In this document: piece by piece, positions 9,487-34,913 of the stretch
Position numbering within the stretch: position 1 is the stretch's first letter
Layout: every line of letters starts with the position of its first letter
Origin: Vitrella brassicaformis CCMP3155
Taxonomy: Eukaryota > Protista > Chromerida
Direction of reading: 5' to 3'
Assembly: GCA_001179505.1 (NCBI GenBank)
Contig: CDMY01000586.1
Coordinates: forward strand, 1-46,866
Length of the DNA stretch: 46,866 bases
Notes under the pieces: model-generated
What the model was told of the DNA's origin: nothing
Seen by the model: the letters and a program-made list of their open reading frames with translations, nothing else
The model's database searches: none
Made by a program: the position numbers and the translations under genes

Positions 9487-10976
9487 TCAATCGACACATC
9501 GAAACCAGACAGCACCACCCACTGGCCAGCTGACACCACCCCTTACACCACCACCGTCCGTCCCCCTGTTGATGACGTCACGCTTGAGGGAAGGGTCGCA
9601 GCACCCACGGCACGCCAACGGGGCATCCATCGACTGCGGGAAGCGGTCGGCGAGCGGCTCAGACCGATCACCAACAGGTCCTCGGTCGTGGACAGAATTC
9701 ACAACACCGCCCAACCCAACCGCCAGGTGGGTCTCGCCCGGTCTGTGGCCGCTCAGAATCACACGACGATGGTCATCGGCATCAGCAGCATTCAGATCGT
9801 CCCCATCGCCGCGATCTTCGACAGCGATGCCCAAATCCTCTGGGATGCCCGATGTCAGCACGGCCATAGCGGGGGTCACCACTGCCGATGTGTGCAAGGA
9901 GCACCCTCCTCTGAACCCTTCCCTGTTCATCGAGGGTGATGTCGGTCGGTCACCAGAAAGCGTCCTCTAATAGAAAGGCGCTGAGGGAAAGGGGAAGGGG
10001 AGGGGGACGTACCGGGGATGGTCATTGCCTGAAAGTGCACACACACACATGCACATCCATCCATCCATCCACGTAGCCGTGAGTGGGTCACCAAGCCATG
10101 CACAGCTCTCTCCCTTTGCACACTCGATCAAATCAAACTGTCCCCCTCCTTTACGTAGCGGCCGGATGATGGTGAGGCGTATGGGGCGCCCCGGGCGGTC
10201 GCCCTTGCCCGCAAGACCCTCGCTCACGGGCAGGGCCTCATCGATGGTCTTGTCTTGAAATCGGTAAAGTGCATCGCCCATGTACCCCTCCGGGTAATAA
10301 GGGCTCTTCTTGATCATCGCCTTGAAGTCATTGGTGCACGTGCCGGCTCTCACATCTACGGGGAAAGGTTGTAGGCTTCGGCCGCTCTCCTCGACTAGCA
10401 CCACCCACTTCCGAAGCATCTTTCGTGGGTTGGAGCTGGGAGGAGGAGGAGCTTTCGGAAGCAAGTCCGCCAGCCAATCTCCTAGCTTCGAGCCAGCGGG
10501 GAGCTGCTGAGTGCCGGGACGGGGGCGGGCGGGAGAGGCAAGTTGCTGCGGCCGCGACGCAGTAATAGGGGAGGGGCCGATGAACGATGCTGGATCAGCA
10601 AGGGGCTGCACACACACATCACACACACACACACGTAGACGAGTCCACGTGCGCTCTCGTGTGCTCTGCCTGCCCCAGATGCCCGTGGGTGTATGTGTGC
10701 GGCCGGCGCTGCTGCCTGTCAGCTGACCTGTGTGCTGCTGTGTATGCCCTGCGTGGACAGCGTGAATAAGGCAAACAGCAGGGCAAACAAACTCTGCAGG
10801 AAACCCATATGGACGCAGTGACGAGAAAGATCCAATCACGATTTCGCCGCTCTGGGCGTCGATGGAGCGAATCGATGACCTATCGACGCGCCGGGCCGGA
10901 CATGACAGCGCTACTGAAGACAAGAACAACGGCCATACATATCGGTGCGTTGTGCTGGCGTGCTGCCTTTCGCTCT
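9487..10976 (-). CDS. Left copy of the ubiquitin-like-domain gene, probably continuing into an uncharacterised 3' exon (9487-9890)
   Basis: ORF 9967-11262 contains KWVVLVEESGRSLQPFPVDVRAGTCTNDFKAMIKKSP...LYRF...GKGDRPGRPIRLTIIRP. The downstream ORF 9487-9930 is protein-like. The exact splicing is unresolved. Confidence 0.5.
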
Positions 10977-12283
10977 CACCTGTCAACTGTGGTCGTCTTG
11001 CTCTGTCGCTCGGGACAGACGGGGACAGGCATTTCACCAGGAAAGAGGCAAGCTCGCCAAGCTCGCAGGGGCTCCGAAGAAAAGGACTTAACTCATTCCT
11101 TCGGAGAAGAAAAGAACTCCCTGAAACCGCTGCTGCAGAAGAAAAGGATTTTAAGAAAATATCGGAAGCGCGTGGAGTCGGTCGCGATGTGCCATGATGT
11201 CTGCAGAATACCCTGGTACGGATGGGGATCGGGGGATGGGAAGCATCGCAACACCGTCGCACTCATCCGACCTTCAGACAGAGCGAAAGGCAGCACGCCA
11301 GCACAACGCACCGATATGTATGGCCGTTGTTCTTGTCTTCATTGGCGCTGTCATGTCCGGCCCGGCGCGTCGATAGATCTTCATCGATTCGCTCCATCGA
11401 CGCCCAGAGCGGCGAAATCGTGATTGGATCTTTCTCGTCACTGCGTCCATATGGGTTTCCTGCAGAGTTTGTTTGCCCTGCTGTTTGCCTTATTCACGCT
11501 GTCCACGCAGGGCATACACAGCAGCACACAGGTCAGCTGACAGGCAGCAGCGCCGGCCGTACACATACACCCACGGGCATCTGGGGCAGGCAGAGCACAC
11601 GAGAGCGCACGTGGACTCGTCTACGTGTGTGTGTGTGTGATGTGTGTGTGCAGCCCCTTGCTGATCCAGCATCGTTCATCGGCCCCTCCCCTATTACTGC
11701 GTCGCGGCCGCAGCAACTTGCCTCTCCCGCCCGCCGCCGTCCCGGCACTCAGCAGCTCCCCGCTGGCTCGAAGCTAGGAGATTGGCTGGCGGACTTGCTT
11801 CCGAAAGCTCCTCCTCCTCCCAGCTCCAACCCACGAAAGATGCTTCGGAAGTGGGTGGTGCTAGTCACGGAGAGCGGCCGAAGACTACAACCTTTCCCCG
11901 TAGATGTGAGAGCCGGCACGTGCACCGATGACTTCAAGGCGATGATCAAGAAGAGCCCTTATTACCCGGCGCCGTACATGTGGGATGCACTTTACCTTTT
12001 TGAAGACGAAACCATCAATGAGGCCCTGCCCGTGAGCGAGGGTCTTGCGGGCAAGGGCGACCGCCCGGGGCGCCCCATACGCCTCACCATCATCCGGCCG
12101 CTACGTAAGGGAGGGAGACAGTTTGATTTGATTGAGTGTCCAAAGGGAAGAAGGAAGCCGTGCATGGCTTTGTGACCCACTCACGGCTACGCGGATGGAT
12201 GGATGGATATGCATGTGTGTGTGTGTGTGCTCTTTCAGGCACTGACCATCCCCGGTACGTCGTCCTCCCCTTCCCCCTTCCCT
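9985..12283. repeat. About 1-kb inverted repeat (arms about 9985-10976 and 11280-12283) around a spacer of about 300 bp
   Basis: The reverse complement of the left arm matches the right arm, including introns. ORFs 9967..11262(-) and 11222..12175(+) translate almost identically. Confidence 0.95.
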
Positions 12284-12417
12284 GGTGACCGACACCACAC
12301 TCGCACCGCACACAGACCGGCCGGCCGGCGGGCTCGCTGGCCATCCGTCCGTCCGTGCGTGTGCTTGTCACTTCATGTAGTTCTGTCTGTCTGTCTGTCT
12401 TCAGGTATTATGGTTGA
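11194..12417 (+). CDS. Right copy of the ubiquitin-like-domain gene; first exon MMSAEYP; short C-terminus
   Basis: ATG at 11194/11197 with donor G|gtacgg at 11216. The Ubl-like exon reads KWVVLVTESGRRLQPFPVDVRAG...IRLTIIRPL. Terminal micro-exons end at TGA 12415-12417. Internal splicing is uncertain. Confidence 0.5.
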
Positions 12418-13175
12418 CTGACCACTACGTAGATATCAATGGATATCAATGTAACCAGCGCAGCGACGCTGCAGGACAGACAGACAGACAGAACTACACT
12501 CAGGTGCCTTGCCTCGCCGCCTGCCTCTTGTATGTATCCACGTCTCTGTATGCATGCATTTGGGATTCTGTATTCTCGCGTGTGGGGATTTGTGTGGGTG
12601 TATGGGAATGTATGGGCGTGTGTTTGCGTAGCGAAGTCCAAGCGGAGCGCCTGACCCACCGTTCATGGCCTCAGTGCGTGTGAAATCGTTTGATGCATGT
12701 TGTCGATTGACAAGTCACAATGCATTTATCGCCATGGCCCGGATGGAAAAATTGACGTGTCAGCGTCATCGTGGTCACGTTGTAAGTCAGTGCACACACA
12801 CACGAGAGGTGCAAGCATGCAAGATGTCCGCAAGGCACACGCCTTTGCACTGATTTGGCCTTCAGACGTGCACTTGTGTTCCGAGGGGAAATAAGCAGCA
12901 CAAAATGCATACAAAGCAACCATCCCACCCCCCGAGATCATCCTCGCAACACCCACGCCAGCAAACCACAACACACGGACACCCGACACGCCAACTCAAT
13001 CACACGATGCAGACAAAAACCGAGTTGACCAGCTCGCCCCTCAGGCAACGCACCTCAAGAGGGAGCAAGGAGCCTGCAGCCAAAACCAGTCATTTCTCAT
13101 CCATCAGCAGTATCGGCTGTGTTCGCTCTTGTGTGTCGGGCATCAACCGACGCATCACTCCTCCCCCCCTCTCAG

Positions 13176-15056
13176 TCAGTCGATCCCCAGCGACACAAAC
13201 TCTCCCCCACTGCTGCCCTCGACACGCCAGCCCAGCTGCCGCCACACAAAGTGGCAGTCCTCATCGCCCAGGTGCTCGTTGAAGCCCTTCACCACCGCAT
13301 CCGCAAGCCCCCACATGCGCAACGCATGACGCGGGGCCGAGTTGCCGAGCGACTCCAGCCGCGCCTTGTGGACCACCTCACGCAGCCCCAGACGGCCGGC
13401 CGTGTGCACCACATGAGGCGGACGGCTGTCGGCCCCATCGGCGACGGCGAAGCACTGCAGCGGCACCCGCACCACCACGCTGCCCACATTCTCCTTGCGG
13501 CCCACCACCTCCCTGTTGCTGCTGGCCCTGAGCACTGCCGAGCGGACGAAGTGCTCGACGGCCGCACGCACACGCCGGGCCAGGACGCTGTGCCGCACAC
13601 CGATGGCCTCACTGATGGCCTCCCGGGCGGCAGCCATGTCGAAGAGGTAGGATGCGATGCGCCAGCCGAAGATGGGCGCCTCGTGGGGACCGACGGCCAG
13701 CCGGGGGGTGAGGAGGGCCGCGAGTGAGCGATGGGGGGCGAGGGCATTGTTGACCGCCGAGATGACGGCACCCGGCAGCTCGTTGAGCACTGTCGCGTAC
13801 TCGGCCAGCACCAGCTGACGCTGACGGAGGCTTGCCTGGATGGCATTGTGGTACGCCCGGATGGCTGAAGGGGGCATGTTGTTGTCTAAGCCAATGCTGT
13901 CGATGTCGGCGCCGGCCCGCAGCAGCGAACGGATGGTCAGCTTGCGGTTGCGCATCCGGAAGTCCTCTGGTGGCGTGTACGGCGAGATCGTTTCGTAGGC
14001 GGTAGAGGCAGCCTCGGCCAGGGGCGTGAGTGTCGGTTCGTTGATTTGGTCCACGGGCAGCCTGCGGCAGAGGTACTCGGTCACATAGGGCGCGCCGAGA
14101 TATGCCGCCGTCTGCAGCGGCGTTTTGCCATTGATGCCACCGACTGCCGTCATGTCTGCCCCGTGCCGTACGACGATGTCCAGGTAAATGTTGATGAACG
14201 ACTGGGAGTAATACCCCAACGCGCGCATGGCTGCCATGTGCAGCACGTTCTCGCTATGGGGTTGTTCGGTGGCGAGAGAGGGGCTGCGTTCGATGAGGGT
14301 GCTGTAGAATGACAGAAGCCGAGTCTGATAGTCGGGGGGAGGGGGATGCCCGGAATCGAGCAGCGGCATGGGCAGCGCCATCACCCAGAGTCCGTCCAGG
14401 TCGATGTTGTCCTGCGCCATCAGCAGCTTGAATGCCGCCTCGTTGCCGGATACGATTGCCACTTGGAGGGGTCTTTCCTCCGCGCCATCGGCCGCGTGAC
14501 GGGCTTGTCCACCGTTCACGTCGGCGCCTCCGTCAATCAGCGCAGTCAGGATGGCCTCCTGCAGCTCATCTGACGTCCACTGCGGCAGGGCGACAGCATC
14601 CAAATCCGCATTAGCTCGGATCGACAGCACGGTGTTGCCCGATGTGTTGTCGATAGCGAGAGCGAGCATCGAATACACACGGAGGCCACACCTGGTGCGG
14701 AAGCCACACCTGCTGCCCTTTCTTCGCAGCCCAGCCACGGCACGGGGGTTGGCTCCTTGCTGCCGAATAAGGGCGGTCAATTGGTGTGGGCCGGTGAGGG
14801 TGCGGCCGACGATGCCCGCTGCCATTCGCTTGGTGGCCTCGTTGGTGCCCCGAGGGAGGAGCATCTCCGTGTTGGTGGCCGTCAACCAGTTGATGGGCAA
14901 ATCAGTGGGGGCAGCGGCGCCGTCAAAAGTGAAAACTGCACAACAAACAGGGGGAATGTTTGTTGTGCCGGTTTGGCATGTACGTGCCGTACCGCTCTTC
15001 TCGTCGAAGTTGTATCCATTGTGTTGGTCACTGTCCAGTAAGCCACCCTGCAGCAA
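13176..15056 (-). CDS. Ankyrin-repeat protein with a conserved uncharacterised C-terminal domain (paralog 1); extra 5' exons likely extend to about 15330
   Basis: Long ORF with ankyrin motifs RPLQVAIVSGNEAAFKLLM, NVLHMAA, KTPLQTAAYLGAPYVTEYL and LLRAGADIDS. Confidence 0.85.
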   Translation of the reverse strand: MLQGGLLDSDQHNGYNFDEKSGTARTCQTGTTNIPPVCCAVFTFDGAAAPTDLPINWLTATNTEMLLPRGTNEATKRMAAGIVGRTLTGPHQLTALIRQQGANPRAVAGLRRKGSRCGFRTRCGLRVYSMLALAIDNTSGNTVLSIRANADLDAVALPQWTSDELQEAILTALIDGGADVNGGQARHAADGAEERPLQVAIVSGNEAAFKLLMAQDNIDLDGLWVMALPMPLLDSGHPPPPDYQTRLLSFYSTLIERSPSLATEQPHSENVLHMAAMRALGYYSQSFINIYLDIVVRHGADMTAVGGINGKTPLQTAAYLGAPYVTEYLCRRLPVDQINEPTLTPLAEAASTAYETISPYTPPEDFRMRNRKLTIRSLLRAGADIDSIGLDNNMPPSAIRAYHNAIQASLRQRQLVLAEYATVLNELPGAVISAVNNALAPHRSLAALLTPRLAVGPHEAPIFGWRIASYLFDMAAAREAISEAIGVRHSVLARRVRAAVEHFVRSAVLRASSNREVVGRKENVGSVVVRVPLQCFAVADGADSRPPHVVHTAGRLGLREVVHKARLESLGNSAPRHALRMWGLADAVVKGFNEHLGDEDCHFVWRQLGWRVEGSSGGEFVSLGID

Positions 15057-15950
15057 ACAGATAGCCCCCCGATGACGTTGGGTGGGTGGAGTTCGTGCCT
15101 TACGTCATCAGCGGCTGTCGCACCCTCACGCTGCTGCTCGTCTGAATGACAAGTGACACAGAATGAGTGACACAAAATGAGTGCACCTTTTTGTGTGTGT
15201 GGCTCACCGTCGTGGTTGGTGTCTTGGTGTGGCTGCCCGCTGCCGCCGTGCTCACGCACATCCACTCCACCTGCTGACAAGCATGCTCGTGGGGGGGTGT
15301 ATGGTGTCTTGTGAATGTGTGTGGCATTCAAATACCTGCTTCGCCATGCACCGGATGGGCAGCCGAGGGCACGTCAGTGTCGGGCCGCTCAGACATCACA
15401 AACACACACCGACACCTCAACGGTACACAAACAGTTACTGTCGTCTTTCCACGATTGACGGTCGCTGACGCTCACTGTGTGGTGCTGTCTGCGTTGCCTC
15501 ACCGGCACTCAATGAATGAATGGATGAATCAATCAATCAATGAATGAATGAATGGCTCTCCGCCACGACAAAGCTGACCTGAACACACAATCACATGCCG
15601 TCTGCCTTTCATGGTGCCTGAATAGTTCGTCACTCACCGGGGCAACTGAATCCAGCAGGTCGGGTGTGTCAGCTCCTTCAGCAGCCTCCCACAACGACGC
15701 GAGAGGCAGGTCCGCTATGCATGCGATATCGAAAGAGAGGCTGAAAAGGGAAATGGTCTCATGACTCTCATCCGCTGTGGCCAGTCTGCTCCACAGCCGC
15801 CTCTACACAACGGCAAATGCCGGCGACAAACGAGGCTCGAGAAAGCCAAGCTCGCCAAGCTCGCAGCTGGAAGGGACGAAAGATCTGAATGTGGACGTTT
15901 GCTGGAGTGAAGCAGAGGCGCGTCCGGTGTCGGCTGATGAGTGAGATGTG

Positions 15951-16754
15951 ATGTCACTTGAGTCCGTCAAGAAGAGCCTCTGGGTGGCGGCCAAGTCAGT
16001 CCAGCTCATCGGCGTCCTCCACGTCATACACGAGTACCTATTCGACTTCTCATCGGTGAATCAGTGACCAACACACCGAGAGCGGCTCATGCATGGCCAT
16101 GGCAGAGGGAGATCTTCATGTTGATTTGTGTGTGGGGGGGTATGCAGGCCGTCGGCCCTTCGATGATTCCAGCGCTCAATGACAAGGGCGACATTGTCAT
16201 TTACGAGCGGCTCACTTATCGGCTGCGTGGCTTCGAGAGGGGCGAGGTCGTCATTGCCGTGTCGCCAGAGAACTCACAGCTGCGCGTGTGCAAACGCATC
16301 ATTGCCACGGTGGGTGCTGTAGGACACACATAGATGCGGACAGTCATGTGCTCCTGTTCGGCCATTGGTTGCAGGAGGGCGACAGAGTGATAACGGGTGT
16401 GAGCGGCGCCAAGAGCATCGGCCAGTATGACGTCAAGACCACCACCGTGCCCCGGGGCCACGTGTGGCTGCAGGGCGACAATCCGCTGCACTCACACGAC
16501 AGCCGCCATTACGGAACCGTGCCCGTCGGACTCCTCCTCGGCAAAGTCACCTGGAAGGTCGGCTGAAGGCTTTGACAGCAATGGCATAGATGGGGAGCGG
16601 CTGACTGCGGATGTTCCTTCTTTGCTTGTGTGGTACATACGTGTTAATTGTTCAGGTTTGGCCGTTCTATCAGGTGTGTCGGGTGTCGCGTGAGGTGCCG
16701 CTGGAGGCCAAGGCTTCGGTGATTCCTTTCGGGGTCGCGACGGTGCCCGGCTGA
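15951..16754 (+). CDS. IMP1: Mitochondrial inner membrane protease subunit 1 (peptidase S26), 4 exons
   Basis: AVGPSMIPAL carries the catalytic Ser, RVCKRIIAT the catalytic Lys; also VPRGHVWLQGDNPLHSHDSRHYGTVP and final VWP. Stop TGA at 16752-16754. Confidence 0.92.
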
Positions 16755-19165: not shown

Positions 19166-19306
19166 TTCTCTCCCCCCGCCTCCCTGCACCCCTCCCCTCC
19201 CTCCCCCCGGCTGTTATCTTACTGGAGAAGAATTCCCCCAGGGCCTCGGCCTTCTTCTCAGCGGAGAGAGAGCCGCCCATCGTCACCCAACGAACAAACA
19301 CTCACA
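19166..19306. promoter_or_regulatory. Bidirectional promoter region between the multi-Cys coiled-coil gene and GAPM
   Basis: The inferred divergent ATGs are about 140 bp apart. Confidence 0.5.
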
Positions 19307-21255: not shown

Positions 21256-21568
21256 GCAGCCCGCCGCAACAATACAACACGATACTAGCACACATTAGAT
21301 AGGGGGCACGTAGGCAGGCAGGGGCGGGAGGGAACAGCGGGCGCCGGCGCATCAGACATACGGAGTTTTAATAACGGGGGATGTCAGAGGGGTTCGGTGC
21401 TGGATTTTTCGTTGCGGACACCACACACTGTCACATCCATTGTTTATATCACACCACCACATCCACACGTTCATGGAACGTCCATGTCTCGACTCTACTT
21501 TCCCATGAAGTGACGGCAGCCTTGGCGGCTCACAATTACGCCCACCCATGAATGCACCTCTTTGTCTG

Positions 21569-23163: not shown

Positions 23164-23911
23164 CGTGGCACAAAGTGAAGACGCTTATCGCAACCGACTC
23201 CACGCGCAGATCCTTTCTGGAGCAGCAGCGGTTTCATGGAGCACCCTAGTTTTGCGAGCTTAGGTTTCTGCAATTTTGGTTTTCTGGCATCTCCGCCATT
23301 GTGTAGAGGCGGCTGTGAAGCAGACTGGCCACAGCGGATGAGACCATTTCCCTTTTCAGCCTCTCTTTTGATTCGCATGCACAGCGGACCTGACTGATGC
23401 GCTTGCTGTGGGAGGCTGCTGAAGGAGCTAACACACCCGACCTGCTGGATTCAGTTCAATTGATTCAGTCGCCCCGGTGAGTGACCAACTGTTCAGACAC
23501 CATGAAAGCCAGACTGCAGGTGACTGATGGTTCAGGTCAGCTTTGCCGACGGGCGCAATAGGACGGGCGTTTCATTCATTAATTGATTGAGTGCCGGTGA
23601 GGCAACGCAGGCAGCACCGCACAGTGACCGTCAGTAGGCGCAGACGCAGCGTATGCAGTGCCCGTGGCAATTGTCGCTCTGTTGTGTTTGCCTTTGCTTG
23701 TGTCGTTCAGGTACCTTTCTGCCGTTGCGAGGAGCTGAAGCAGCTGCTCGAGTCAACCGCAGGATCATCCATCGCCGACTCGGTGAGTGATGACCGACTC
23801 GCCGGCACACACGAACGGCGGGCCTGAAGGGTGACAAACGGATGGTGTCTGCTGCCCTGGTGTGATTTTGTCAGCTGACAGTGAACCACTTGTCGGAGCA
23901 GCATCGGTGCG

Positions 23912-25777
23912 ATGTGGTGGAATTATTATGACAAGAGTTATGAGGACACCGGTACGCCGGACAAGGGAGAGGGTGCGATGAAATGCCCACAGACACCCAC
24001 TCACTCTCTGTGTGCGTCGTGTGGCGGTTGTGTTATGTTGTGCTGTGCTGCAGGCGTGGCTATCGTCCTCTTGACGGCCGCTTCGGTTCAGGTGCCGGTG
24101 ACGGCTGTGGGCGTCGACAAGATTGAGGCTCGATTCCCCCGGGGCACCAGCGAGGCCACCAAGCACCTGGCAGTGGGCGACATCGGCCGCACCATCGCCA
24201 GTCCACACGACGCGACCGCACTTATTCGGCAGCATGGAGCCGACCCCAAGATCGTGCCTCGGCTGCGGCAGGGCAGCGGGGAGGAAGGCGGACTCAAGAG
24301 TAATGGGTTCGCCTACTCGCTCCTGAATCTCGCCATCGACAACAAGTCGGACAACACCGTCGGAAGCATCTCAGCAGAGGGGCTACCTGATGGACTGCCG
24401 GACCAGCCCGTCGTCCTACCTCAGTGGCCCGACGGGCTGCAGGAAGGCATCCTCACTGCACTCATCGACGGCGGCGCTGACCCCACCGCACTCAAACCCC
24501 TTGAAGTGGCGATCAGGTTTGCCAACGAGGCGGCCTTCGACCTGCTTATGGCGCGTCACGACCGTCTGCACGACCAACCCGGATCTCTGCACAACCAACC
24601 CGGAACTGACCTGCGTGGGTCGTTGATGGGGCTGCCCGAGCCGCTGTCTCCGCTCGCCTCCGACCAACGCCCCCCGCCCACCCACTATCTGAAGGTGCTC
24701 ATGTCGACGTATCAGCGACTCATCCAACGAGACCCCACCCTCGCCACCGATGGCCTCCTCGTGCACAGAGCTGCCTTCTTTGCGGGGGGCCTCTATCCCC
24801 AGTGGTTCATGGACAGCTACCTGGACCTCATCGCGCAGCACGGCGCCGAGATGACGGGATTTGACAGCGATACAGGGACGCCGCTGTACGTGGCGGCAGA
24901 ACACGGCTCTCCAGAGGTGGCCGACTACCTCTGCCGCAAGCTGCCCGCTGACCAGATCGACAGACGGGGGAACCACCCTGCCTACACACCCCTCGGCAGG
25001 GCTGCAGCGGGGCTCGATTTTCACACCTCCTGCGAGGTCATGAAGAAGTATTTTGGCGCCAAGATTCCCAACTACAAGATGACCATCCGTGCGCTGCTGC
25101 GGGCCGGGGCCGACATCAACAGCATCCACAACCCCTATGACATACAGCAGCACCACCGTGAGCGCCGGCTTGTGCTGCTCGAGTATGCCACGGTGCTCAA
25201 GGAGCTGCCGGGTGCCGTCATGTCGGCGGTCAACAATGCCCTCGCCCCCCATCGCTCACTTGCGGCCCTCCTCATACCCCGGCTGGCCGTCGGCCCCCAC
25301 GAGGCGCCCATCTTCGGCTGGCGCATCGCATCTTACCTCTTCGACATGGCTGCCGCCCGGGAGGCCATCAGTGAGGCCATCGGTGTGCGCCACAGCGTCC
25401 TGGCCCGGCGTGTGCGTGCGGCCGTCGAGCACTTCGTCCGCTCGGCAGTGTTCAGGGCCATCAGCAACAGGGAGGTGGTGGGCCGCAGGGAGAGTGTGGG
25501 CGGCGTGGTGGTGCGGGTGCCGCTGCAGTGCTTCGCCGTTGCCGATGGGGCCGACATCCGTCCGCCTCATGTGGTGCACACGGCCGGCCGTCTGGGGCTG
25601 CGTGAGGTGGTGCACAAGGCGCGGCGGGACGAGGCGGCACTGCATGGTGTGGAGGACGTGGCCAAGGGCTTCAACGAGCACCTGGGCGATGACGACTGCC
25701 AGTTTGCGTGGTGGCAGCTGGGCTGGCGCATCGAGGGCAGCAGTGGGGGGGAGTTTGTGTTGCTGGGGATCAGCTGA
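23912..25777 (+). CDS. Ankyrin-repeat protein with a conserved C-terminal domain (paralog 2)
   Basis: KPLEVAIRFANEAAFDLLM, GTPLYVAAEHGSPEVADYL and LLRAGADINS. The C-terminus is nearly identical to paralog 1. It has an N-terminal intron at the same position as paralog 1. Confidence 0.85.
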   Translation: MWWNYYDKSYEDTGTPDKGEGAMKCPQTPTHSLCASCGGCVMLCCAAGVAIVLLTAASVQVPVTAVGVDKIEARFPRGTSEATKHLAVGDIGRTIASPHDATALIRQHGADPKIVPRLRQGSGEEGGLKSNGFAYSLLNLAIDNKSDNTVGSISAEGLPDGLPDQPVVLPQWPDGLQEGILTALIDGGADPTALKPLEVAIRFANEAAFDLLMARHDRLHDQPGSLHNQPGTDLRGSLMGLPEPLSPLASDQRPPPTHYLKVLMSTYQRLIQRDPTLATDGLLVHRAAFFAGGLYPQWFMDSYLDLIAQHGAEMTGFDSDTGTPLYVAAEHGSPEVADYLCRKLPADQIDRRGNHPAYTPLGRAAAGLDFHTSCEVMKKYFGAKIPNYKMTIRALLRAGADINSIHNPYDIQQHHRERRLVLLEYATVLKELPGAVMSAVNNALAPHRSLAALLIPRLAVGPHEAPIFGWRIASYLFDMAAAREAISEAIGVRHSVLARRVRAAVEHFVRSAVFRAISNREVVGRRESVGGVVVRVPLQCFAVADGADIRPPHVVHTAGRLGLREVVHKARRDEAALHGVEDVAKGFNEHLGDDDCQFAWWQLGWRIEGSSGGEFVLLGIS

Positions 25778-26041
25778 CTGTGAGAGCGGGAGGAATTGAT
25801 GTGTCGACTCATGTCCGACCCACAAGAGCGAAGACAGACAGTCGATAGACAGCGCGGAGAGGCGGGGTGCATGGTGGATGGGCGAGACACATTTAGCTGC
25901 ATGAATGAATGAATGAATGAATGAATTTCGACATGGATGTCGTAACTCATGATTGAATGCAATTACCTTCGTCATTGGAATGAAATGTCTTTCTGGAATA
26001 TCAGTCAATGTCCATGGCTCCAACACATCAACATTCGGACC

Positions 26042-28208
26042 CTAATCATTACTAACATCACTCTGCCACCTGACCCCTCTGCCCCTCCCACCCCCCTCAC
26101 TCGAATCACTCTCCAGCACATTCGCCCCCGACCGACGCACGCCAACCGAGGAGGCACACACAAAGATGCCGTCGATGGCACTCAGCGACCTTGGCGGGAT
26201 CGTCTCCTCCCTCATCCCTCGGCCCTCGACCGACGTGCAGGGAGGTGGTGGGCCACTAGGAGAGTGAGGGAGGGTGGTCGTGGTGCGGCTTCTCGAGTGC
26301 TTCCTGTTGATGCACGGCCGCAGCTGCTTCGGTGACCCGTCAATGAGCGATGCACCCGACTCAGCATTGGGCGCGCTGCCGGCCGCCGCGTCCCCAGCTT
26401 GCGTAGCCGACTGTGGGGATGACGATCCCGGGCCGAGTGATGGGGTTGGTGTGTGGGTGGTGGCGGAGGCTGGCCCGTCGACGAGGAAGGCCTTGAGCGA
26501 CTCGATCCAGTGGTCCCGCTGGACGTCGTCACGGAGGACCATGGGGTACGGGAAGGCCGACATCTTGACGATCACTGACTCCCCCTTCTGAATCTCCATG
26601 CGGGAACGGCCGTCGATTGCCACCTACACACACGAGAGACCAACAGACATGCATTGTGTGCTGTGCGTCGTCTTGTCAGGTTGCTTGGCCTACCCATGCG
26701 GTTGCACGGCTGTCGTCCGGGACCTTGATGCGGAGTACGCCCGAGTCGTGCAGCACGAGGGGGCGGAAGGAGGGGAAGTGGGGACAGATTGGGGTGAAGA
26801 GCATGCACGGCACCTGGGGATGCACCATGGACCCGCCAGCTGACATGCTGTAGGCCGTCGAGCCAGTGGGAGTTGCGATGATCAAACTGATCAACCAATA
26901 CCACACAATGCATCCACTCGTCTGCCTGTCTGACGTTTGGCCCGCACCCGTCAGCTGCAACGGTTGCAAAGAACTCTTCGTTGTAGAACGCATCAAGGTT
27001 AGTCAAGAAAGAACCAGGACCTGCATGACACACACACGATCAGACAAGGAAAACCGTGCAGGCTTTTTCCTCACTCTCCTCCTTGTGGCTGCCTGATCTG
27101 ACGCACCTCTGTCGACAACGCAGTCATTGATGGCGCTCAACTCGTGCTTAATCACGTCACGTGAGTCAACCAGCATCACCTCTGCACACACAGACACGTA
27201 GCGGTGCATCACATCCCTCCCGGCTTGCTCACTGAGTCTGCATCTGAGGCATATGGAGAAGCCAGAGTGGACCATCCGCCGCAGCACCGCCTTCATCTCA
27301 GACACTTCAAAATGAGTCAAGTAACCCAACGAACCCTGCAGCAAGCCAAACACACACACAACGCACAACGTCCGTCATGCGGGGCCTGTCGGTACCATGG
27401 AGAATCCGACGACGGGCGGTACGACATTGGTCATGAGGTGTGATGCCCAGAGCATGGTGCCGTCGCCCCCCAGTGCGACCACAAAGTCGATGTGGTTCCC
27501 CAGCTCCTCGGGAGGACCCTCCTCCTCGTGCCACGTCTTGACCATCATCGCACCCTGACACACGCACAGTGCGGATGCGGGTCGTGCTGTGTCTGGGTGT
27601 AGTGGTATACCGCTGAGACGAATTTGTCTGAGGCGGTGGGCTCGACGATCACCTGCAGGCCAAGCTCCTCCGACAAAAACCTGACGAGCAAAGGCCGCAT
27701 ATGACATGCACGTACGTACCATCGTATCAACGGCTGATCTCTCTCCCCACTGGTGCTTCTCTCACACTGCAAGTTCGACTGCCACTTTGGTCATGCTTGG
27801 TGAGTTGATGCGCTTAATCATGAGCACCCGCTGGGGCTTCTCCTTGAAGGTGCGGTAAATGTTGCCCGTCTGCGCACGCGGCAAGTGGTCCATCCTGCAG
27901 CCAACAAAGCGGCAAACGTAGTGTCTGTCCGCGCCCGGGTCGGTGTGTAGGTCAGCTCACTCGAGGTTGTGTCCATCGGCGGCATCATCGGTCTGCCTGT
28001 AGATGCGGATGACGCTCTTGGCAGGCGACTCGGGCACATGGTCAGAGTCCGCTGGCGACGGCTCCTGCCGCTCAGTCCACACGGCGGGAGTGATCCCAGC
28101 TCCCGAATTGAGCCCAGTGCCCGTCGTGCCACCAATGGAGGCGTTGCCACCAGGTGTCTGGCTATCCTTCGGCTTCCCGCTCGCAAAGATGCTGGGATTC
28201 GTGGACAT
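26042..28208 (-). CDS. NADK: ATP-NAD kinase
   Basis: [17 protein letters not shown] (GGDG motif), [33 protein letters not shown] and FTPICPH. Start MSTNP at 28208. Confidence 0.93.
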
Positions 28209-28233
28209 GCTGACAGGAGAGGAAACCACCGTA

Positions 28234-28419
28234 GTAAAAAACGGAATGAATGTGACGACTTGTCTGCGCCGCCGCGCGATCCGGCTGCCGCGCGGAAGCC
28301 TCCATCGCTGAGTGGCTGAAATGCGTCCATTCAATCCCGAACTCGGGATCGCTTCTTGAGCTCGCAAAGTGGCCCGGGCTGGGGAGCTCGTGTTTATGGT
28401 TGCTCCATCACTCGTGGCT
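28234..28419 (-). promoter_or_regulatory. NADK promoter/5'UTR segment, duplicated in inverted orientation at 33422-33610
   Basis: The core 135 bp differ at 5 positions by manual alignment. A further 50 bp or so of looser match extends upstream. Confidence 0.85.
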
Positions 28420-28700
28420 TTTCCCCCACAGGCGTGGAGCAGAGAGATATCTATGGAGCCATTGACTCATGGACTACAACTGATCGTCGTTGAACTATGT
28501 CTACACACACATGTAAACTGGCTCTCATCTGTGCCTGTAGGCAGATTATCCGTCTGGCTCACATTATCTGTATGTCTTTCTGTCTGACAGTGTCTGTGCG
28601 GACACTCCACATCGCGCCGATCACACACACACACACACACACGCACACACAGGGCTCACATGGCGCATGACTAAAGGCAGAAATGGCATGCAGCCTTCAA

Positions 28701-30058
28701 TCAATCTGACCTCTCCTCCACACAAAGGACCTCCAAATCGTCGGCCATAAAGTCCTTACTGCCCCCAAACACAGCTTTGCCATGCATATCTCTCGGCCCC
28801 ACATAGCCCTCAGGTACATCATACCTGCCGACGAACTGACGGCAGCTGTACATGTCAGCCGCAGCACCACATCCCAGCCACAACCTCGCACCGATCCACA
28901 GCTTCGCTCGCCCATAAACTGTCCCCTCCCGCCCGGCCACCCGCACTCTCCGCCCGCCTATCATCTTGGTCGGTTGTTTAAAGTGGCCACTCAACGAGAA
29001 ATGCCACACATCGCAGTCGTAGATGTTCTCGCCTGTTGGGTCGTCTGGCGGCTTGATGCGGCCGCTCACGTAGGCGCCGAACACGTAGGCATTTTTCTTG
29101 ACAACAAACACCAGCTCGCTCTCATCGCCCACACAACCGAGGAACTTGCCATACGACGGCCCATCGCGAGTCGCCCTGTAAAGACGACGAGAGAGAGGCC
29201 CATGCAGATGAGCATGAGTCCAGGACAAGCGCACCTGTAGATGAGCTTCAGTCTCCTTCCACTTGCCTCTCCAAGGAAGTGATAGAGTGCCGCAGACGTG
29301 AGGGCATCGAAAGTTGCGCCCTGGATCATCTGCAATGACAGCAGACCACCAATGCCGCTCTCTCTCTCACTGATATGTGTATGACCTTAAGTGAGAGTAG
29401 TGACCGGTATTGGACACCAATGACTTCCAATTCATCGGCCATAAAGCCCTTACTGCCCCCAAACACAGCATAGCCATTCTCATCCCTCACCCCCACATAG
29501 CCCTCAGGCAGGCAGGCATGTCCGTCAGGGATGAAGTGACAGCAGCTGAGCATATCAGCAGCGGCGCCACCCTCACAGCCCAAACCCAGGCCAGCACCAC
29601 CACCGAACAGGCCCCCGATCCACAGCTTCACCCCACCCCACACTGTGCTCTCCCGCCCAATGATTTTGATGGAATGCCGGCCTTCCATCATCTTGGTCGG
29701 CTGTTTGAAGTGGCCACTTAAGGAGAAATGCCACACATCGCAGCTGTAAAACCACGCCTCCGTCTCATCGTCACTGTGATGTGGGATTGCGCCGCTCATG
29801 TAGGCGCCGAACACGTAGGCATTTTTCTTGAGAACAAACACCAGCTCGCTCTCATCGCCCACACAACCGAGGAACTTGCCATACGACGGCCCATCGCGAG
29901 TCGCCCTAACACGACGAGAGAAAGCGTTAAGGCACATACTGTTGGGCCTGTGTATCGCACCTGTAGAGCAGAGTGAATTCACATTCGTCCGCCATGGAAG
30001 GCACGAGGGAGTGGAGGGCCGCAAACTCGGCCTCACTGTGGCCGCTGCCAACGATCAT
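28701..30058 (-). CDS. Tandem TLDc-like domain protein (two domains; N-terminal part unresolved)
   Basis: Two copies of LYR|ATRDGPSYGKFLGCVG...VFGAY..G...WHFSLSGHF...FGGSK.FMAD.LEV, each with the intron at LYR|A. Confidence 0.82.
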
Positions 30059-30059
30059 C

Positions 30060-33000
30060 TGCATGACAGCGAGAGGTGAAAGCAATCAAGGTGATGTGAC
30101 CACATGGGCATTCTCACTCGCAATACACGCCCGTCGTCCCCGTATGTCTTCCTACGAGACCACACCTGCACACATCACACAACAATGCCATACCGTCTGT
30201 CTACGTGGGTTTGTTCCATTGCAGTTGACTCACGATACGCGGCGGCACCTCTCGGTGGTCGCGTGTGGGCGTCTTTTGGACCTCATACGACACACTGATC
30301 ACGTCACCATCATCCTGAAGGCAGAATGCATGTGTGCAGCAAGGGAATTGTTGCTCTGTGCATCTCTCTCACCTCTTGTATGTCACTCAGGCGATCGTCG
30401 GCAGTGACGCTGAATGCAGGGTCAACACATGAGCCAGACCACACCTGCACACATCACACAACAATGCCATCCCGTCTCTCTACGTGCGTTTGTTCCATTG
30501 CAGTTGACTCACGCCAGACGGCGGCACCTCTCGGTGGCCGCGACTGGACGTCTTTTGGATCTGGACCGGTGGCCCCCTTGGCAGCTGTTTGTCCGACACC
30601 GACGGTGGAAGCTGAATGAAGTACGGTGCTCGTTCGCCAACAGATAAGTGAGCCTTCTTCGCTTTCTTACGGGCGTGACGTTTGTTTGCTGTGATGGCTG
30701 CGATTGTGCGTCAAACGGTTGACCACTACCAGCAGCAGCAGCATCGGTGGTCTGCAGAACACGGGAAATACGCAGGGGCCTCTCTCGCTGCCATGGTGTC
30801 AGACCGCTTCTCTCACCATAGCGTCAGGACCGCGACTAATGTTCTCATGTGCTTCTCGCACCGCAGCTGACTCGCCAACCATTTGCTCCTGCAGACAGCA
30901 GAGAAAAGACGTGCACTAATTGCGTGCATCGTCTGACGTCAGACGTTGTTTTGCTTCCTACATGCTGGTCGCTGAGTCGGTCGCTTTTTGATGACGGTGG
31001 TGCAGCAGCAGGCTCGGCGCCCTGAGACGAGAAACACATTTGCTAAAAGTGCATGTGGATGTGTGGTGCGTACGTGTCTGCTCAGTCCATTCGTGAGCTC
31101 CTCTTGTAGTGGCTGGTCAGAGATGGGAGCAGGCAGGGGGTGTGGGTGGGGCGGATGCCACGGGGGATGGGAAGACGCTGCGGCCGCAGCCGGTACAGGC
31201 GCCTCTTTTCGGGGCTGCAACAAGCACCAGATGGGAAGTGCTTTGAGTACCTGATTTCTCTCTCACCTGAATGTCATCCGATGTGTCAGCTTCCGGATCG
31301 GGCATACTTTCCCACCACTTCTGAAGCGCCTTGGCCTCTTCCTCACGTGTCATCTGTACACAAAAACATACGATGCTCACGGCGCTCGGTGATCCGATGG
31401 ACATGCACTCTTTTCTTTGCCGACCGGCATTCCATCGGTGGGTGGAACAGCAGCTGCAGCGGGATCGGCAGCGCGTGACTCAGAAGGCGGCAGAGAACTC
31501 TGGTTAAGCACGCATGAATTAATGAATGGCGAGTGTCTCACCGCTTCATGCCTACAGTGGTCTCTCGATTCACCTGGTGGTTGTCTGACGTGGCACTCTC
31601 CGTATGCTCTGCAGCCTGCACGCAGAGAGAGAAGCTGTCTCTGCGGTAGCCCTCCCTGCATGAGTGAGGTGATGCACAAACCTGTCGGCTATCGACTCTT
31701 GAATTTGTCAGACTTGGCGGACGCTCGTCGTGGGATGCCCTTGCCGGAGGTGAGATGGCTGCAGCAGCAGCAGCAGCTGGTACAGCACCAACTGCACCAG
31801 CCGCCGCGGGAAGGGTCTGACGATTCAGGAAAGCACGGATCGATCATTTACAAATCCCCTATGTCGTTGCTCTTTCCCCCACCCGCTCATATCTGTTCTT
31901 GACGCCACCCGGTAAACCTACGTCTGCGGAACCAGCAGCAGCAGGGGCGGGGGCGCGGGTGGCTTGTGGGACGGCTGGCTGTGGCTGTGCCTGTGGCGGG
32001 ACGGTCATGGGTGGTGCCATTGAAAGGGCATGAGTGGGGGGAAGCCGAACGGCATCCCTGGCGCAGGGAACATCCCCGGACCGATCGGAGGCACTGGGAA
32101 GCCTGCAACAACCACACACACAGACCACTCACACAGACACGATGCACACACACCGCCCGCCCTTGCTTGTTCTCTCACCTGGTCGAGGGACCACGTTGGC
32201 CAGCCCAGCCATGCCCATCCTCGGACGGATCTGCTCCGCCCCCCGCGCGGCCGCAGCAGCCGTCGCCTCGGCCACCTTCGCGTCCTCCGATGACGGAGGA
32301 CGAGGCTGTCTCGGCCCAAATGCTGTAACCACACAGCACAACATCAACCCCTCTCTCAATGCCAGGCGCTGCTCTTTATTTCTTACTCAATGCATGGCCG
32401 GAAGCAGGGGTGGGAGGCACAGGTTGGTCTGGAGCGTTAGAGTGCTGAAGAAAGCCACAGATCCTTTCTTATCGAACAACAAAGCAATAATCTGATCTTG
32501 CCCGACCTGATCAGATGCATCGTCCTTATCATCCTTGCGACACCGGTGTCTGCTCCATTCACCCGCGTCGAAATAATTTTTTTGCGCAACGGCGGCACCG
32601 GTCGCGCTGCTTCTCTGTCGTGCTGTTGTACTCCCAGGTGATGACGAAGGTCGACCCGTTTTTCAGGTCGACGATAGCGTGAGGTTCTCACGATGAGTGA
32701 GGCTGGTGTGAGGGCCGAGGCTGCGCGTCTTGAGAGGGCAAGCTGCAGACAAACGTGTCGACTCGCTCGCGGTCCTTTCGAGGCGAGCAGGCAAAGAGGA
32801 TTGCATACAAGACGCTAGAGCAGTGCACTTAGCTCCTACCGGATTGTCTGTCCGACACGTGGCTCAGCTCCGCAAATCCAAGCAAGACGCTTTTGACAGC
32901 CGAGTCGTTGAGCTTCTTGATGAAGTCTTCGCGGACCGGCACTCGAAAGCCACAAACCTCCACCCATTCGCAGTGGTCCTTCTCCTCGGAATTCTTGACC

Positions 33001-33330
33001 TTGGCGGCAAGGCCTCTTTCCAGCCAGTTGACGATGTCACGCCACCGCATGGATTGCAGAAGCTCAAACACCTTCTTTGTGACGCGATCTTGTACTTCCG
33101 CCGGCGGCTGCGCCGATTGAGATGGCTAACCGAGGACACATGCACACACATACACACGTGTCGTGTGTGGTGGCTGTCATGTACCTGTGGTGGTTCAGTC
33201 ACCTTGTAGCTACTGCGGCCGCACACACACAGCAGGGATCTGTGTTTGATTCCTTTGCGTTTCTTTTCCTGGTGGCTTACGTGAGGCCGACGACGCTGCC
33301 TGTGTTATCAATCCCAACACGCCTTCTCAG
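30060..33330 (-). CDS. Unresolved minus-strand exon fragments (Pro-rich segments and a CxxC..HxC-like segment); one or two genes, possibly degenerate
   Basis: Protein-like stretches flanked by splice signals, for example MFELLQSMRWRDIVNWLERGL, GFPVPPIGPGMFP and QMTREEEAKALQKWW. A single frame could not be reconstructed. Confidence 0.3.
30156..30561. repeat. Imperfect direct repeat of about 125 bp (30156-30285, 30436-30561) covering an exon end and intron start on the minus strand
   Basis: AGACCACACCTGCACACATCACACAACAATGCCAT...GGCGGCACCTCTCGGTGG occurs twice, 280 bp apart. Confidence 0.85.
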
Positions 33331-33421
33331 TAAAGGGCACAGCAGATCTCCCAGACGGGCGGCTTGGGTGAACAAATCAATTCATGAAACACACGAACAG
33401 ACGGCCTCACTGTCTCCCCCC

Positions 33422-33610
33422 AGCCACGAGTGATGGGGCAACCATAAACACGAACTCCAAGGGAGCCCGAACCAATTTGCGAGCTCAAGAAGCGATCCCG
33501 AATTCGGGATTGAATGGACGCATTTCAGCCAGTCAGCGATGGAGGCTTCCGCGCAGCAGCCGGATCGCACGGCGGCGCAGACAAGTCGTCACATTCATTT
33601 CGTTTTTTAC
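33422..33610 (+). promoter_or_regulatory. Copy of the NADK upstream segment lying directly upstream of the RBR gene ATG
   Basis: Reverse-complement match to 28234-28419, ending 4 nt before ATG 33615. Confidence 0.85.
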
Positions 33611-33614
33611 GACC

Positions 33615-34761: not shown

Positions 34762-34874
34762 ACCGAAGACCTCGGGGTCAAGAGGCGGGTTGGGTGCGTG
34801 TTGCCTGTGCCCGCGTCTGTCTGTGCATGTGGACCGGGTCAGCGGTGAAGGTGACAACCAGCTAGGCACATACA

Positions 34875-34913
<39 letters not shown>

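What the first reader, a model, noticed from the sequence alone, without database searches (positions are those of the whole stretch)
9985..33610. Three serial outward-facing inverted duplications that recycle promoters between unrelated genes
Seen in sequence: IR1 (Ubl genes, 9985-10976 / 11280-12283), IR2 (ankyrin genes plus upstream DNA, 13105-15865 / 23253-25850) and IR3 (28234-28419 / 33422-33610) lie almost end to end. In all three, both arms are transcribed outward. The duplicated or captured DNA includes upstream regions of housekeeping genes (SAM carrier, IMP1, NADK), and these now sit in front of fast-evolving family genes (Ubl, ankyrin, RBR). No transposase or RT ORF is visible. Inference: a recurrent process may be generating new gene-promoter pairings in this region. 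Candidates are inversions with staggered breaks, which leave inverted duplications at both breakpoints, or fold-back template switching.
Basis: partly seen in the sequence, partly recalled or inferred. Interest (0 to 1): 0.8.

Follow-up and report, generated by a model that had tools for sequence, protein, structure and literature searches.

The report
Three inverted duplications of different ages
In the alga Vitrella brassicaformis three real back-to-back inverted duplications lie side by side, but they differ widely in age and kind: two are whole family genes copied with their own start regions, and only short gene-start pieces have truly been copied in front of unrelated genes.

Summary
Self-alignment recovers all three inverted repeats within 13 nt of the stated coordinates: IR1 95%, IR2 71-77%, IR3 92%. 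All face outward. None is a high-copy element or a likely assembly artefact.

The single-process reading is only partly supported.
- IR1 is a young palindrome of a complete small gene (signal-peptide-like exon, linker, Ubl domain). Its inner 560 nt have been homogenised. Its 303-nt spacer holds two GCGAGCT words and a 107-nt copy of the SAM-carrier 5' end.
- IR2 is a pair of old ankyrin paralogues from a family with at least 48 matches. Each has its own 5' exon and promoter block, which ends exactly at a GCGAGCT word. A third copy on contig C472 matches the right arm through the gene body and the left arm in the 3' flank. That pattern points to an exchange between the arms, probably an inversion of about 12 kb, not to staggered breaks.
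- IR3 is a 190-nt non-coding start module. It ends 2 nt before the RBR start codon and 23 nt before the NADK start codon.

Promoter reuse is shown at sequence level for IR3 and the IR1 spacer. Promoter function and mechanism are untested. This scan noted similar start-module copies elsewhere in this genome (s1-197160, s1-248667).

The parts
9491..9932 (-). Fragment (C-terminal part only) of a family with 40 or more matches. Full-length members elsewhere open with an F-box-like N-terminus (my reading of the motif, not tested). It lies 52 nt from the outer end of the IR1 left arm.
9984..10976 (-). IR1 left arm. It holds the whole small Ubl gene: about 170 nt 5'UTR, signal-peptide-like exon 10808-10728, intron 10727-10606, exon 2 from 10605 (linker plus Ubl domain 10419-10111), then an intron and a mini-exon.
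10977..11279 (.). IR1 spacer between the two Ubl genes, a candidate bidirectional promoter. It carries a GCGAGCT doublet at 11051-11066 (- strand).
11117..11224 (+). Copy of the SAM-carrier 5'UTR, start codon, first 19 coding nt and splice donor. The original lies at 23241-23136 on the - strand.
   Evidence: local alignment score 69 against shuffles 15.6 +/- 2.1, 0 of 500 reach it
11280..12283 (+). IR1 right arm: second copy of the Ubl gene (signal-peptide-like exon 11451-11531, exon 2 from 11654, Ubl domain from 11840).
12446..13105 (.). Flank F: the 3' flank of the left ankyrin gene. It is 86-91% identical to C472:56672-57334 and absent from the right arm.
13105..15865 (-). IR2 left arm: ankyrin ORF 13176-15056, an unalignable intron region, and the promoter/5'-exon block 15465-15865, which ends in a GCGAGCT doublet at 15849-15864.
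13354..13852 (-). High-identity tract of IR2 (93% to 25131-25629; 93-98% among left arm, right arm and C472). Read as an arm-to-arm gene-conversion tract.
15951..16566 (+). Start of IMP1 (Peptidase_S26). The ATG is 86 nt beyond the inner end of the left arm. Its 5' end is not similar to the SAM-carrier 5' end.
21570..23163 (-). SAM-carrier-type mitochondrial carrier gene. The ATG at 23163 is 85 nt beyond the inner end of the right arm.
23248..25850 (+). IR2 right arm: promoter/5'-exon block 23248-23634 with a GCGAGCT word at 23254-23260, and ankyrin ORF 23912-25777.
26430..28208 (-). NAD kinase gene (approximate 3' limit). N-terminal domain exon about 27375-27722, C-terminal domain exon 26643-26885, ATG at 28208.
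28231..28419 (-). IR3 left arm: non-coding start module with TGCGAGCT at 28358-28365. It ends 23 nt before the NADK ATG.
28573..31608 (-). Most of the interval enclosed by IR3: a tandem pair of a multi-copy TLDc-like family (70 or more matches elsewhere).
33422..33613 (+). IR3 right arm: the same module with TGCGAGCT at 33478-33485. It ends 2 nt before the RBR ATG at 33615.
33615..35500 (+). RBR (RING-IBR-RING) E3 ligase gene, annotated as CEM24678.1 (212 aa, starts MGQAS). The 3' limit is approximate.

Best explanation
The three inverted repeats are separate local duplications of different age and kind. They lie in a stretch of the Vitrella brassicaformis nuclear genome that is rich in family genes and prone to duplication.

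IR1 is the youngest. It is a palindromic copy of an entire small gene (signal-peptide-like exon, linker, Ubl domain) around a 303-nt spacer. The inner 560 nt of its arms were later homogenised, most likely by arm-to-arm gene conversion. The spacer is derived from a SAM-carrier/ankyrin-type head-to-head promoter: a GCGAGCT doublet followed by a 107-nt copy of the carrier's 5'UTR, ATG and splice donor.

IR2 is the oldest. It is a pair of inverted ankyrin paralogues, each with its own 5' non-coding exon and promoter block, and each block ends at the GCGAGCT word shared with a back-to-back neighbour gene. The arms still exchange sequence. An exchange near the stop codon has probably flipped the roughly 12 kb between them. 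This is inferred from a third, partial copy on contig C472.

IR3 is of intermediate age. It is a 190-nt non-coding module (word plus 5'UTR) duplicated in inverted orientation, so that it abuts the start codons of two unrelated genes, NADK and RBR.

Shown: the homologies, their boundaries, their ages and the mosaic patterns. Inferred: gene conversion, the inversion, and that the copied modules act as promoters.
For: - Repeats and boundaries.
- Copy number: IR1 and IR3 arms occur only twice in the genome. The ankyrin arm matches 48 or more places at 67-72%.
- IR1 identity by part: about 98.9% over the inner 560 nt (SP-like exon 100%, intron 99.2%), 93.8% in the Ubl domain, 90.6% beyond it; change-point p = 1e-7. 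In the Ubl domain pN is about equal to pS, both near 0.062.
- Paralogues on C478 and C472 share the SP-like exon, intron and linker and have no ATG at the start of the Ubl domain.
- Spacer copy of the SAM-carrier 5' end: score 69 against 15.6 +/- 2.1 in shuffles; it is unique in the genome.
- Ankyrin tree: (left,(right,C472)) with support 100/99.
- C472:51645-56660 matches window 20587-25837 at 80-88%. C472:54988-57334 matches window 14852-12446 at 74% overall and 86-91% in the flank. Informative sites switch from right+C472 to left+C472 near the stop codon.
- The C472 copy is the derived one: its GAPM copy is 5'-truncated and its carrier copy lacks exon 1.
- IR3 arms have no coding frame, whereas NADK exon 1 scores +26 in the MSTNPS frame. 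The annotated RBR protein starts at 33615.
- GCGAGCT occurs 18 times against 7.7 expected, and it lies in or at the inner end of every repeat.
Against: - No RNA data could be reached, so start sites and promoter activity are unproven.
- No outgroup genome was available. The IR2 inversion therefore rests on one intragenomic paralogon. A chimeric duplication made by template switching, or conversion followed by deletion, would give the same pattern.
- The direction of the IR3 copy (NADK to RBR, or the reverse) is unknown. The NADK paralogue on C510 lacks the module.
- Three divergent pairs lying side by side, all containing promoter words, may still reflect a common cause, such as breakage at promoters, which this account does not exclude.
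- The background frequency of inverted repeats in this genome could not be measured.
Confidence: 0.6

Rival explanations
1. One reading: one recurrent process, inversions with staggered breaks. Each inversion leaves inverted duplications at its breakpoints. This process made all three repeats and keeps creating new gene-promoter pairings.
For: IR2 and IR3 bracket blocks of 7.4 and 5 kb. The IR3 arms are an otherwise single-copy sequence, as in the Drosophila cases of Ranz et al. 2007, where 17 of 29 inversions had such duplications with mean identity 88% (PMC1885836). The IR2 interval shows signs of having been flipped. Unchecked notes from this scan report similar cases elsewhere in the genome.
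Against: IR1 encloses only 303 nt between 1-kb arms. In IR2 the left arm's gene body and intron are far older relative to C472 (36-71% identity, partly unalignable) than its own contiguous flank (86-91%). A simple duplication at a staggered break cannot give that. The ankyrin arms belong to an old, large family. Divergences of about 1-7%, 8% and 29% show events far apart in time.
Confidence: 0.15
2. Replication-based template switching or fold-back priming made IR1 and IR3 as small inverted duplications, with no inversion of the enclosed DNA. The SAM-carrier piece in the IR1 spacer is a templated insertion at the junction.
For: IR1 has the classic fold-back shape: 1-kb arms and a short asymmetric spacer. 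The spacer contains a 107-nt piece copied from a locus 12 kb away. IR3 is short (190 nt) and ends precisely at gene starts. The C472 copy could itself be a template-switch chimera of the two IR2 arms.
Against: The junctions cannot be compared with an ancestral sequence, so microhomology is untestable. The spacer piece is collinear with the promoter word in the same way as at the real carrier gene. That suggests one contiguous 180-nt copy and not a junction filler.
Confidence: 0.2
3. The repeats are assembly artefacts or copies of a mobile element.
For: The assembly is a short-read draft of 1064 contigs. A multi-copy family fragment abuts the IR1 left arm, and multi-copy TLDc-like genes fill the IR3 interval.
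Against: The arms differ by 5-29% and contain indels. IR1 and IR3 arms occur only twice in the genome. No transposase or RT domain was found in the ORFs tested. There are no Rfam or tRNA hits.
Confidence: 0.04

Closest known systems
Inverted duplications at inversion breakpoints (staggered-break model; Ranz et al. 2007, PLoS Biol 5:e152)
   Same: Inverted copies of otherwise single-copy, non-repetitive DNA flank a block of genes (IR3, 92% identical). The identity is close to the 88% mean reported for Drosophila.
   Different: Inversion of the enclosed block is not demonstrated for IR3. For IR2 the arms are older than the exchange and mosaic. IR1 encloses no block at all.
Palindromic gene pairs kept similar by arm-to-arm gene conversion (for example the palindromes of primate sex chromosomes; from general knowledge)
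   Same: IR1 has two arms, a short unique spacer, outward-facing complete genes, and much higher identity in one part of the arms (98.9%) than in the rest (91-94%). IR2 has a 500-nt tract at 93-96% inside arms that are otherwise 60-70% identical.
   Different: The scale is tiny (1 kb and 2.7 kb arms). The homogenised part of IR1 is the 5' half next to the spacer. No population data are available.
Inversion by recombination between inverted paralogues (non-allelic homologous recombination)
   Same: Old inverted repeats with a high-identity tract are present. Relative to the C472 copy, the two sides of one ancestral unit (3' flank versus gene body, promoter and neighbouring genes) now sit on different arms.
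   Different: Only one of the two reciprocal products has a comparison copy. A chimeric duplication would look the same.
Duplicated gene-start module in the same genome (scan finding s1-197160, an unchecked AI note)
   Same: A head-to-head start region of a few hundred bases is present as two inverted copies around a small gene block, and it supplies the start of an unrelated gene.
   Different: That case reportedly includes a copied first exon with RNA support. Here the IR3 module is entirely non-coding and no RNA evidence was reachable.

Membership tests
Staggered-break inversion with breakpoint duplications | Inverted copies of ancestrally single-copy sequence at both ends of a segment | tested here: met
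   IR3 arms are the only two copies in the genome. The same holds for IR1. The IR2 arms belong to a large family.
Staggered-break inversion with breakpoint duplications | The enclosed segment is inverted relative to the ancestral order | not testable with these tools
   No relative's genome could be reached. For IR2 there is only indirect evidence from the C472 paralogon. For IR3 there is none.
Staggered-break inversion with breakpoint duplications | The two copies have one age along their whole length | tested here: not met
   IR2: against C472 the left arm is 36-71% in the body and 86-91% in the flank, and the right arm shows the reverse. IR1: 98.9% against 91-94%.
Fold-back palindromic duplication | Two inverted arms separated by a short unique spacer | tested here: met
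   IR1: arms of 993 and 1004 nt, spacer 303 nt.
Fold-back palindromic duplication | Junction microhomology or templated insertion relative to the ancestral sequence | not testable with these tools
   No ancestral sequence is available. The spacer does contain a 107-nt copy from 12 kb away.
NAHR inversion between inverted paralogues | The repeats predate the exchange and share a high-identity tract | tested here: met
   The gene bodies are 60-70% identical, with a 499-nt tract at 93%. Informative sites in the tract favour left+right (18) over right+C472 (10) and left+C472 (12).
NAHR inversion between inverted paralogues | Reciprocal exchange of flanks relative to an outgroup arrangement | tested here: inconclusive
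   C472 links flank F (now at the left arm) to the gene body, SAM carrier and GAPM (now at the right arm). There is no comparison copy for the other product, and a chimeric duplication is not excluded.
Transposable element | Many dispersed copies of the repeated unit | tested here: not met
   IR1 and IR3 arms and the spacer piece each occur only at these places.
Transposable element | Transposase or reverse-transcriptase coding capacity | tested here: not met
   No such Pfam family was found in 48 ORFs scanned between 9192 and 35911. Not every ORF was scanned.
Bidirectional (head-to-head) promoter | Two divergent genes with starts less than 1 kb apart | tested here: met
   Ubl-L/Ubl-R 10808 to 11451; ankyrin-L/IMP1 15056 to 15951; SAM carrier/ankyrin-R 23163 to 23912.
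Bidirectional (head-to-head) promoter | Transcription starts mapped in the shared region | not testable with these tools
   No transcript data were reachable. Only the enriched GCGAGCT word is there.

The most novel reading that the evidence does not exclude
Vitrella repeatedly breaks and rejoins its chromosomes at the nucleosome-free GCGAGCT start sites of back-to-back genes. It keeps only those rearrangements in which a copied start module of 100-400 nt (word plus 5'UTR, with or without a first exon) restores a promoter to the orphaned gene. Under this reading promoters are modular, portable units that are routinely swapped between unrelated genes. IR3, the IR1 spacer piece, the inner ends of IR2 at the word, and the similar cases noted elsewhere in this genome would all be footprints of that process.
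Probability: 0.2. Interest if true: 0.7.

Novelty: new member of a known kind. Interest (0 to 1): 0.42.

Why it matters
Chromerids are the free-living photosynthetic relatives of apicomplexan parasites, and almost nothing is known about how their promoters or genome rearrangements work. This locus offers three things:
- two clean natural experiments in which a short start module (190 nt and 107 nt) has been placed in front of an unrelated gene;
- small palindromes that show arm-to-arm homogenisation;
- an internal paralogue that dates an exchange between inverted gene copies.

If the modules drive transcription, they delimit a minimal Vitrella promoter built around the GCGAGCT word. If the pattern is genome-wide, it would show promoter-centred breakage as a source of new gene regulation. 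As it stands, this is a well-documented but ordinary example of local inverted duplication and recombination.

Tried and rejected
Only C472 (70 kb) could serve as a control. It has one inverted pair, 1-208 / 8971-9178.
- Gene models and transcripts: the look-up of encoding contigs found no record for the ankyrin ORF or for CEM24678.1, and records of the window's own genome may be left out of that look-up. The word search with the RBR 5' ORF returned only the annotated protein and no transcript-derived product.
- Ubl domain: no Pfam hit. No homologue of 57-180 aa; the real proteins are probably about 200 aa. The Atlas gave only a weak Crinkler-like lead.
- IR3 as the remnant of a larger NADK duplication: rejected. 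No other similarity exists between 25800-28700 and 33200-36500 apart from a 130-nt direct repeat.
- IR3 module as native NADK 5' DNA: untestable. The C510 NADK paralogue has no similar upstream sequence.
- IR2 homology extending into the IMP1 5'UTR: rejected (87 of 500 shuffles reach the score).
- IR3 arms as coding sequence (a shared presequence): rejected by codon scoring. The reading frame happens to stay open on the RBR side.
- Positive selection as the cause of the differences clustered in the IR1 Ubl domain: not needed. pN is about equal to pS, and the downstream intron is just as diverged.
- Rfam and tRNA scans of the window: nothing found.
- Literature: one paper holds both 'Vitrella brassicaformis' and 'inverted duplication', each once in passing, and its subject is loss of photosynthesis in cryptophytes.
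Full report
**Source.** The window is the whole 46,866-base contig C586 of a 72.7-Mb, 1064-contig assembly. A protein encoded here is CEM24678.1 of Vitrella brassicaformis CCMP3155, whose longest contig on record is 46,866 bases. This is therefore nuclear DNA of a chromerid alga.

**Observation.** The repeat finder and a self-BLAST recover the three inverted repeats almost exactly as described.
- IR1: 9984-10976 / 11280-12283, 95.4% over 1004 columns, with a 303-nt spacer.
- IR2: 13117-14857 / 24135-25837 (71.3%) plus 15465-15861 / 23248-23634 (76.6%), separated by an unalignable stretch.
- IR3: 28231-28419 / 33422-33613, 91.7%.

E-values range from 0 to about 1e-73. In each pair the left gene is on the minus strand and the right gene on the plus strand, so all face outward. 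The IR1 and IR3 arms have only these two close copies in the genome. Because the arms differ by 5-29% and carry indels, an assembly artefact is unlikely. Pfam scans of 48 ORFs across the region found no transposase or reverse transcriptase. Rfam and ARAGORN found nothing.

**IR1.**
- The arms hold a complete small gene, not just a Ubl exon plus promoter. Upstream of the Ubl domain (ATG at 10419 / 11840) lies an 81-nt exon encoding a signal-peptide-like sequence (10808-10728 / 11451-11531). It has a phase-0 donor and is followed by a 122-nt intron and an in-frame proline-rich linker.
- Paralogues on contigs C478 and C472 share this exon, intron and linker layout, and they have no ATG at the start of the Ubl domain. 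Translation must therefore start at the upstream exon. That makes a protein of roughly 200 aa and explains the blank word search limited to 57-180 aa.
- Identity is uneven. It is about 98.9% over the inner 560 nt, including 99.2% in the intron. It drops to 93.8% in the Ubl domain and 90.6% in the downstream intron and mini-exon (change-point p = 1e-7). In the Ubl domain pN is about equal to pS at 0.062.
- Neutral sites thus differ roughly ninefold in divergence between the two halves of the arms. That points to recent arm-to-arm homogenisation of the inner half, not to selection focused on the Ubl domain.
- The spacer carries a doublet of the word GCGAGCT (11051-11066, minus strand). About 50 nt further on lies a 107-nt copy of the SAM-carrier 5'UTR, start codon, first 19 coding bases and splice donor (11117-11224 against 23241-23136). 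Its local score is 69 against 15.6 +/- 2.1 in shuffles, and there is no other copy in the genome.
- The word and the carrier piece are arranged as at the real carrier gene. The spacer therefore looks like one contiguous copy of that head-to-head promoter core. If the copied donor were spliced to the Ubl exon-2 acceptor, the frame would break, so at most it contributes a non-coding leader.
- The outer end of the left arm lies 52 nt from a fragment (9491-9932, minus strand) of a family with 40 or more matches. Full-length members elsewhere open with an N-terminus that I read as F-box-like.

**IR2.**
- The arms are two members of a large ankyrin family, with 48 matches at 67-72% and 191 first-look candidates. 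Each arm contains the ORF, an unalignable intron-like region, and a conserved upstream block that ends in a consensus splice donor (a 5' non-coding exon) and begins at a GCGAGCT word.
- The homology between the arms stops at that word. The IMP1 ATG (15951) and the SAM-carrier ATG (23163) lie 86 and 85 nt beyond it. The IMP1 and carrier leaders are not similar to each other. The ankyrin genes were therefore duplicated with their own start region. What the housekeeping neighbours share with them is a head-to-head promoter core.
- A third copy sits on contig C472. C472:51645-54096 matches window 20587-23118 at 88% (GAPM 3' part plus carrier). C472:54161-56660 matches 23281-25837 at 80% (promoter block plus right ankyrin gene). 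C472:54988-57334 matches the left arm and its 3' flank (14852-12446). A protein tree gives (left,(right,C472)) with support 100/99.
- Window-by-window identities show a reciprocal mosaic. Right arm against C472 is 79-94% through the promoter, intron and gene body, where the left arm is 36-71%. Left arm against C472 is 86-91% in the 3' flank, where the right arm is unrelated. All three are 93-98% identical in a 500-nt 3' domain.
- Informative sites switch from right+C472 to left+C472 around the stop codon. Inside the 3' domain they slightly favour left+right (18 against 10 and 12), which is a sign of arm-to-arm conversion.
- C472 is the derived copy. Its GAPM copy starts in mid-exon next to an unrelated gene with a DnaJ-like motif (my reading of the sequence, not scanned), and its carrier copy lacks exon 1. 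It therefore records an earlier state of this locus, in which flank F, one ankyrin gene, its promoter, the carrier and GAPM were contiguous. Today F is attached to the left arm and the rest to the right arm.
- The simplest account is a crossover between the two pre-existing inverted paralogues near their 3' ends, which inverted about 12 kb. I put this at about 55%. A chimeric duplication made by template switching between the arms (about 25%), or conversion followed by deletion (about 20%), would give the same picture.
- A staggered-break origin of the arms does not fit. The left arm's body and its contiguous flank have very different ages relative to C472.

**IR3.**
- The arms score as non-coding in all frames, whereas NADK exon 1 scores strongly in the frame that starts at 28208. 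The annotated RBR protein starts at 33615. The homology ends 23 nt before the NADK ATG and 2 nt before the RBR ATG.
- Each arm contains TGCGAGCT. The 128 nt between the word and the gene are 95% identical, and the roughly 55 nt on the other side are more diverged.
- Nothing else is shared between the two gene regions except a separate 130-nt direct repeat (26016-26149 / 35502-35632, 82%, unique in the genome).
- The NADK paralogue on C510 (75-79% identity) has no similar upstream sequence, so the donor gene cannot be named.
- The enclosed 5 kb is mostly a tandem pair of a multi-copy TLDc-like family. I could not test whether this interval is inverted.

**Synthesis.**
- The three repeats differ about 30-fold in divergence and differ in kind: a whole-gene palindrome, a pair of old family paralogues, and a 190-nt non-coding module. 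They sit among other local duplications. That argues for a duplication-prone neighbourhood and not for one demonstrable mechanism.
- Three divergent orientations out of three is not significant on its own (p = 1/8).
- What does stand out is that GCGAGCT, enriched in the window (18 against 7.7 expected; none of 100 shuffles reach 18), lies in the IR1 spacer, inside both IR3 arms, and exactly at the inner ends of IR2.
- Earlier unchecked notes of this scan proposed this word as a start-site signal of head-to-head genes (s1-212022, s1-226937). They also reported other inverted start-module copies in this genome (s1-197160, s1-248667) and several inverted segmental duplications bracketing gene blocks (s1-205707, s1-197257, s1-205723). 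I did not test those cases.
- They keep open the more novel reading, that breakage at promoters plus retention of copied start modules is a recurrent feature of this genome. Testing it needs the genome-wide scan and the transcript-start data that I could not obtain.

**Comparison with known systems.** The closest described phenomena are these:
- breakpoint duplications of staggered-break inversions (Ranz et al. 2007, PMC1885836);
- palindromes homogenised by gene conversion;
- inversions by recombination between inverted paralogues.

Each repeat here resembles one of these. None is a new kind of system.

**Verdict.** I rate it a new member of a known kind, of moderate interest.

Noticed in passing
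window 10808-10111 (-) and 11451-12150 (+); L003, L010: The Ubl genes probably encode small secreted proteins: an 81-nt signal-peptide-like first exon, a 122-nt intron, a proline-rich linker, then the Ubl domain. Paralogues on C478 and C472 share the layout and have no ATG at the start of the Ubl domain. The Atlas feature search gave a weak Crinkler-header lead (0.89-0.90).
   Followed up: partly
window 9491-9932 (-): C-terminal fragment of a family with 40 or more matches (clusters on C350, C240, C377). Full-length members are about 350-530 aa and open with an N-terminus I read as F-box-like. The fragment lies 52 nt from the end of the IR1 left arm, on the same strand as the left Ubl gene, so it may form a chimeric 3' end or be a dead fragment.
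   Followed up: partly
window 28573-31608: Tandem pair (28720-29197 / 29414-29924, 75%, with sub-blocks at 81-95%) of a multi-copy TLDc-like family with 70 or more matches elsewhere, concentrated on C268.
   Followed up: partly
window 26016-26149 and 35502-35632: A 130-nt direct repeat (82%), unique to these two places in the genome. One copy lies in the 3'/3' gap between the right ankyrin gene and NADK. The other lies about 1.9 kb downstream of the RBR start. Its origin is unexplained.
   Followed up: partly
C472:51645-57334 (L030): A derived partial copy of GAPM-3' / SAM carrier / ankyrin / flank. The GAPM copy starts in mid-exon and carrier exon 1 is missing, so both are probably pseudogenes. 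C472 also has an inverted pair of its own, 1-208 / 8971-9178 at 98.6%, at the contig end.
   Followed up: partly
C510:263571-265805 (L048): A second NAD kinase gene, 75-79% identical at DNA level to the window's gene from exon 1 to the 3' flank. Its upstream region is unrelated and carries its own GCGAGCT doublet.
   Followed up: partly
window 33615-33760: The annotated RBR model CEM24678.1 splices out 25 codons right after MGQAS. These include the first Cys-x2-Cys of RING1. The open frame and codon score suggest this 'intron' may be coding.
   Followed up: no
window 1-70 and 355-424: A perfect 70-nt direct repeat at the very start of the contig.
   Followed up: no
window, 18 sites: GCGAGCT is enriched (18 sites against 7.7 expected; none of 100 shuffles reach 18). 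The doublet at 11046-11066 in the IR1 spacer is 20/21 identical to the doublet at the inner end of the IR2 left arm (15846-15866).
   Followed up: partly
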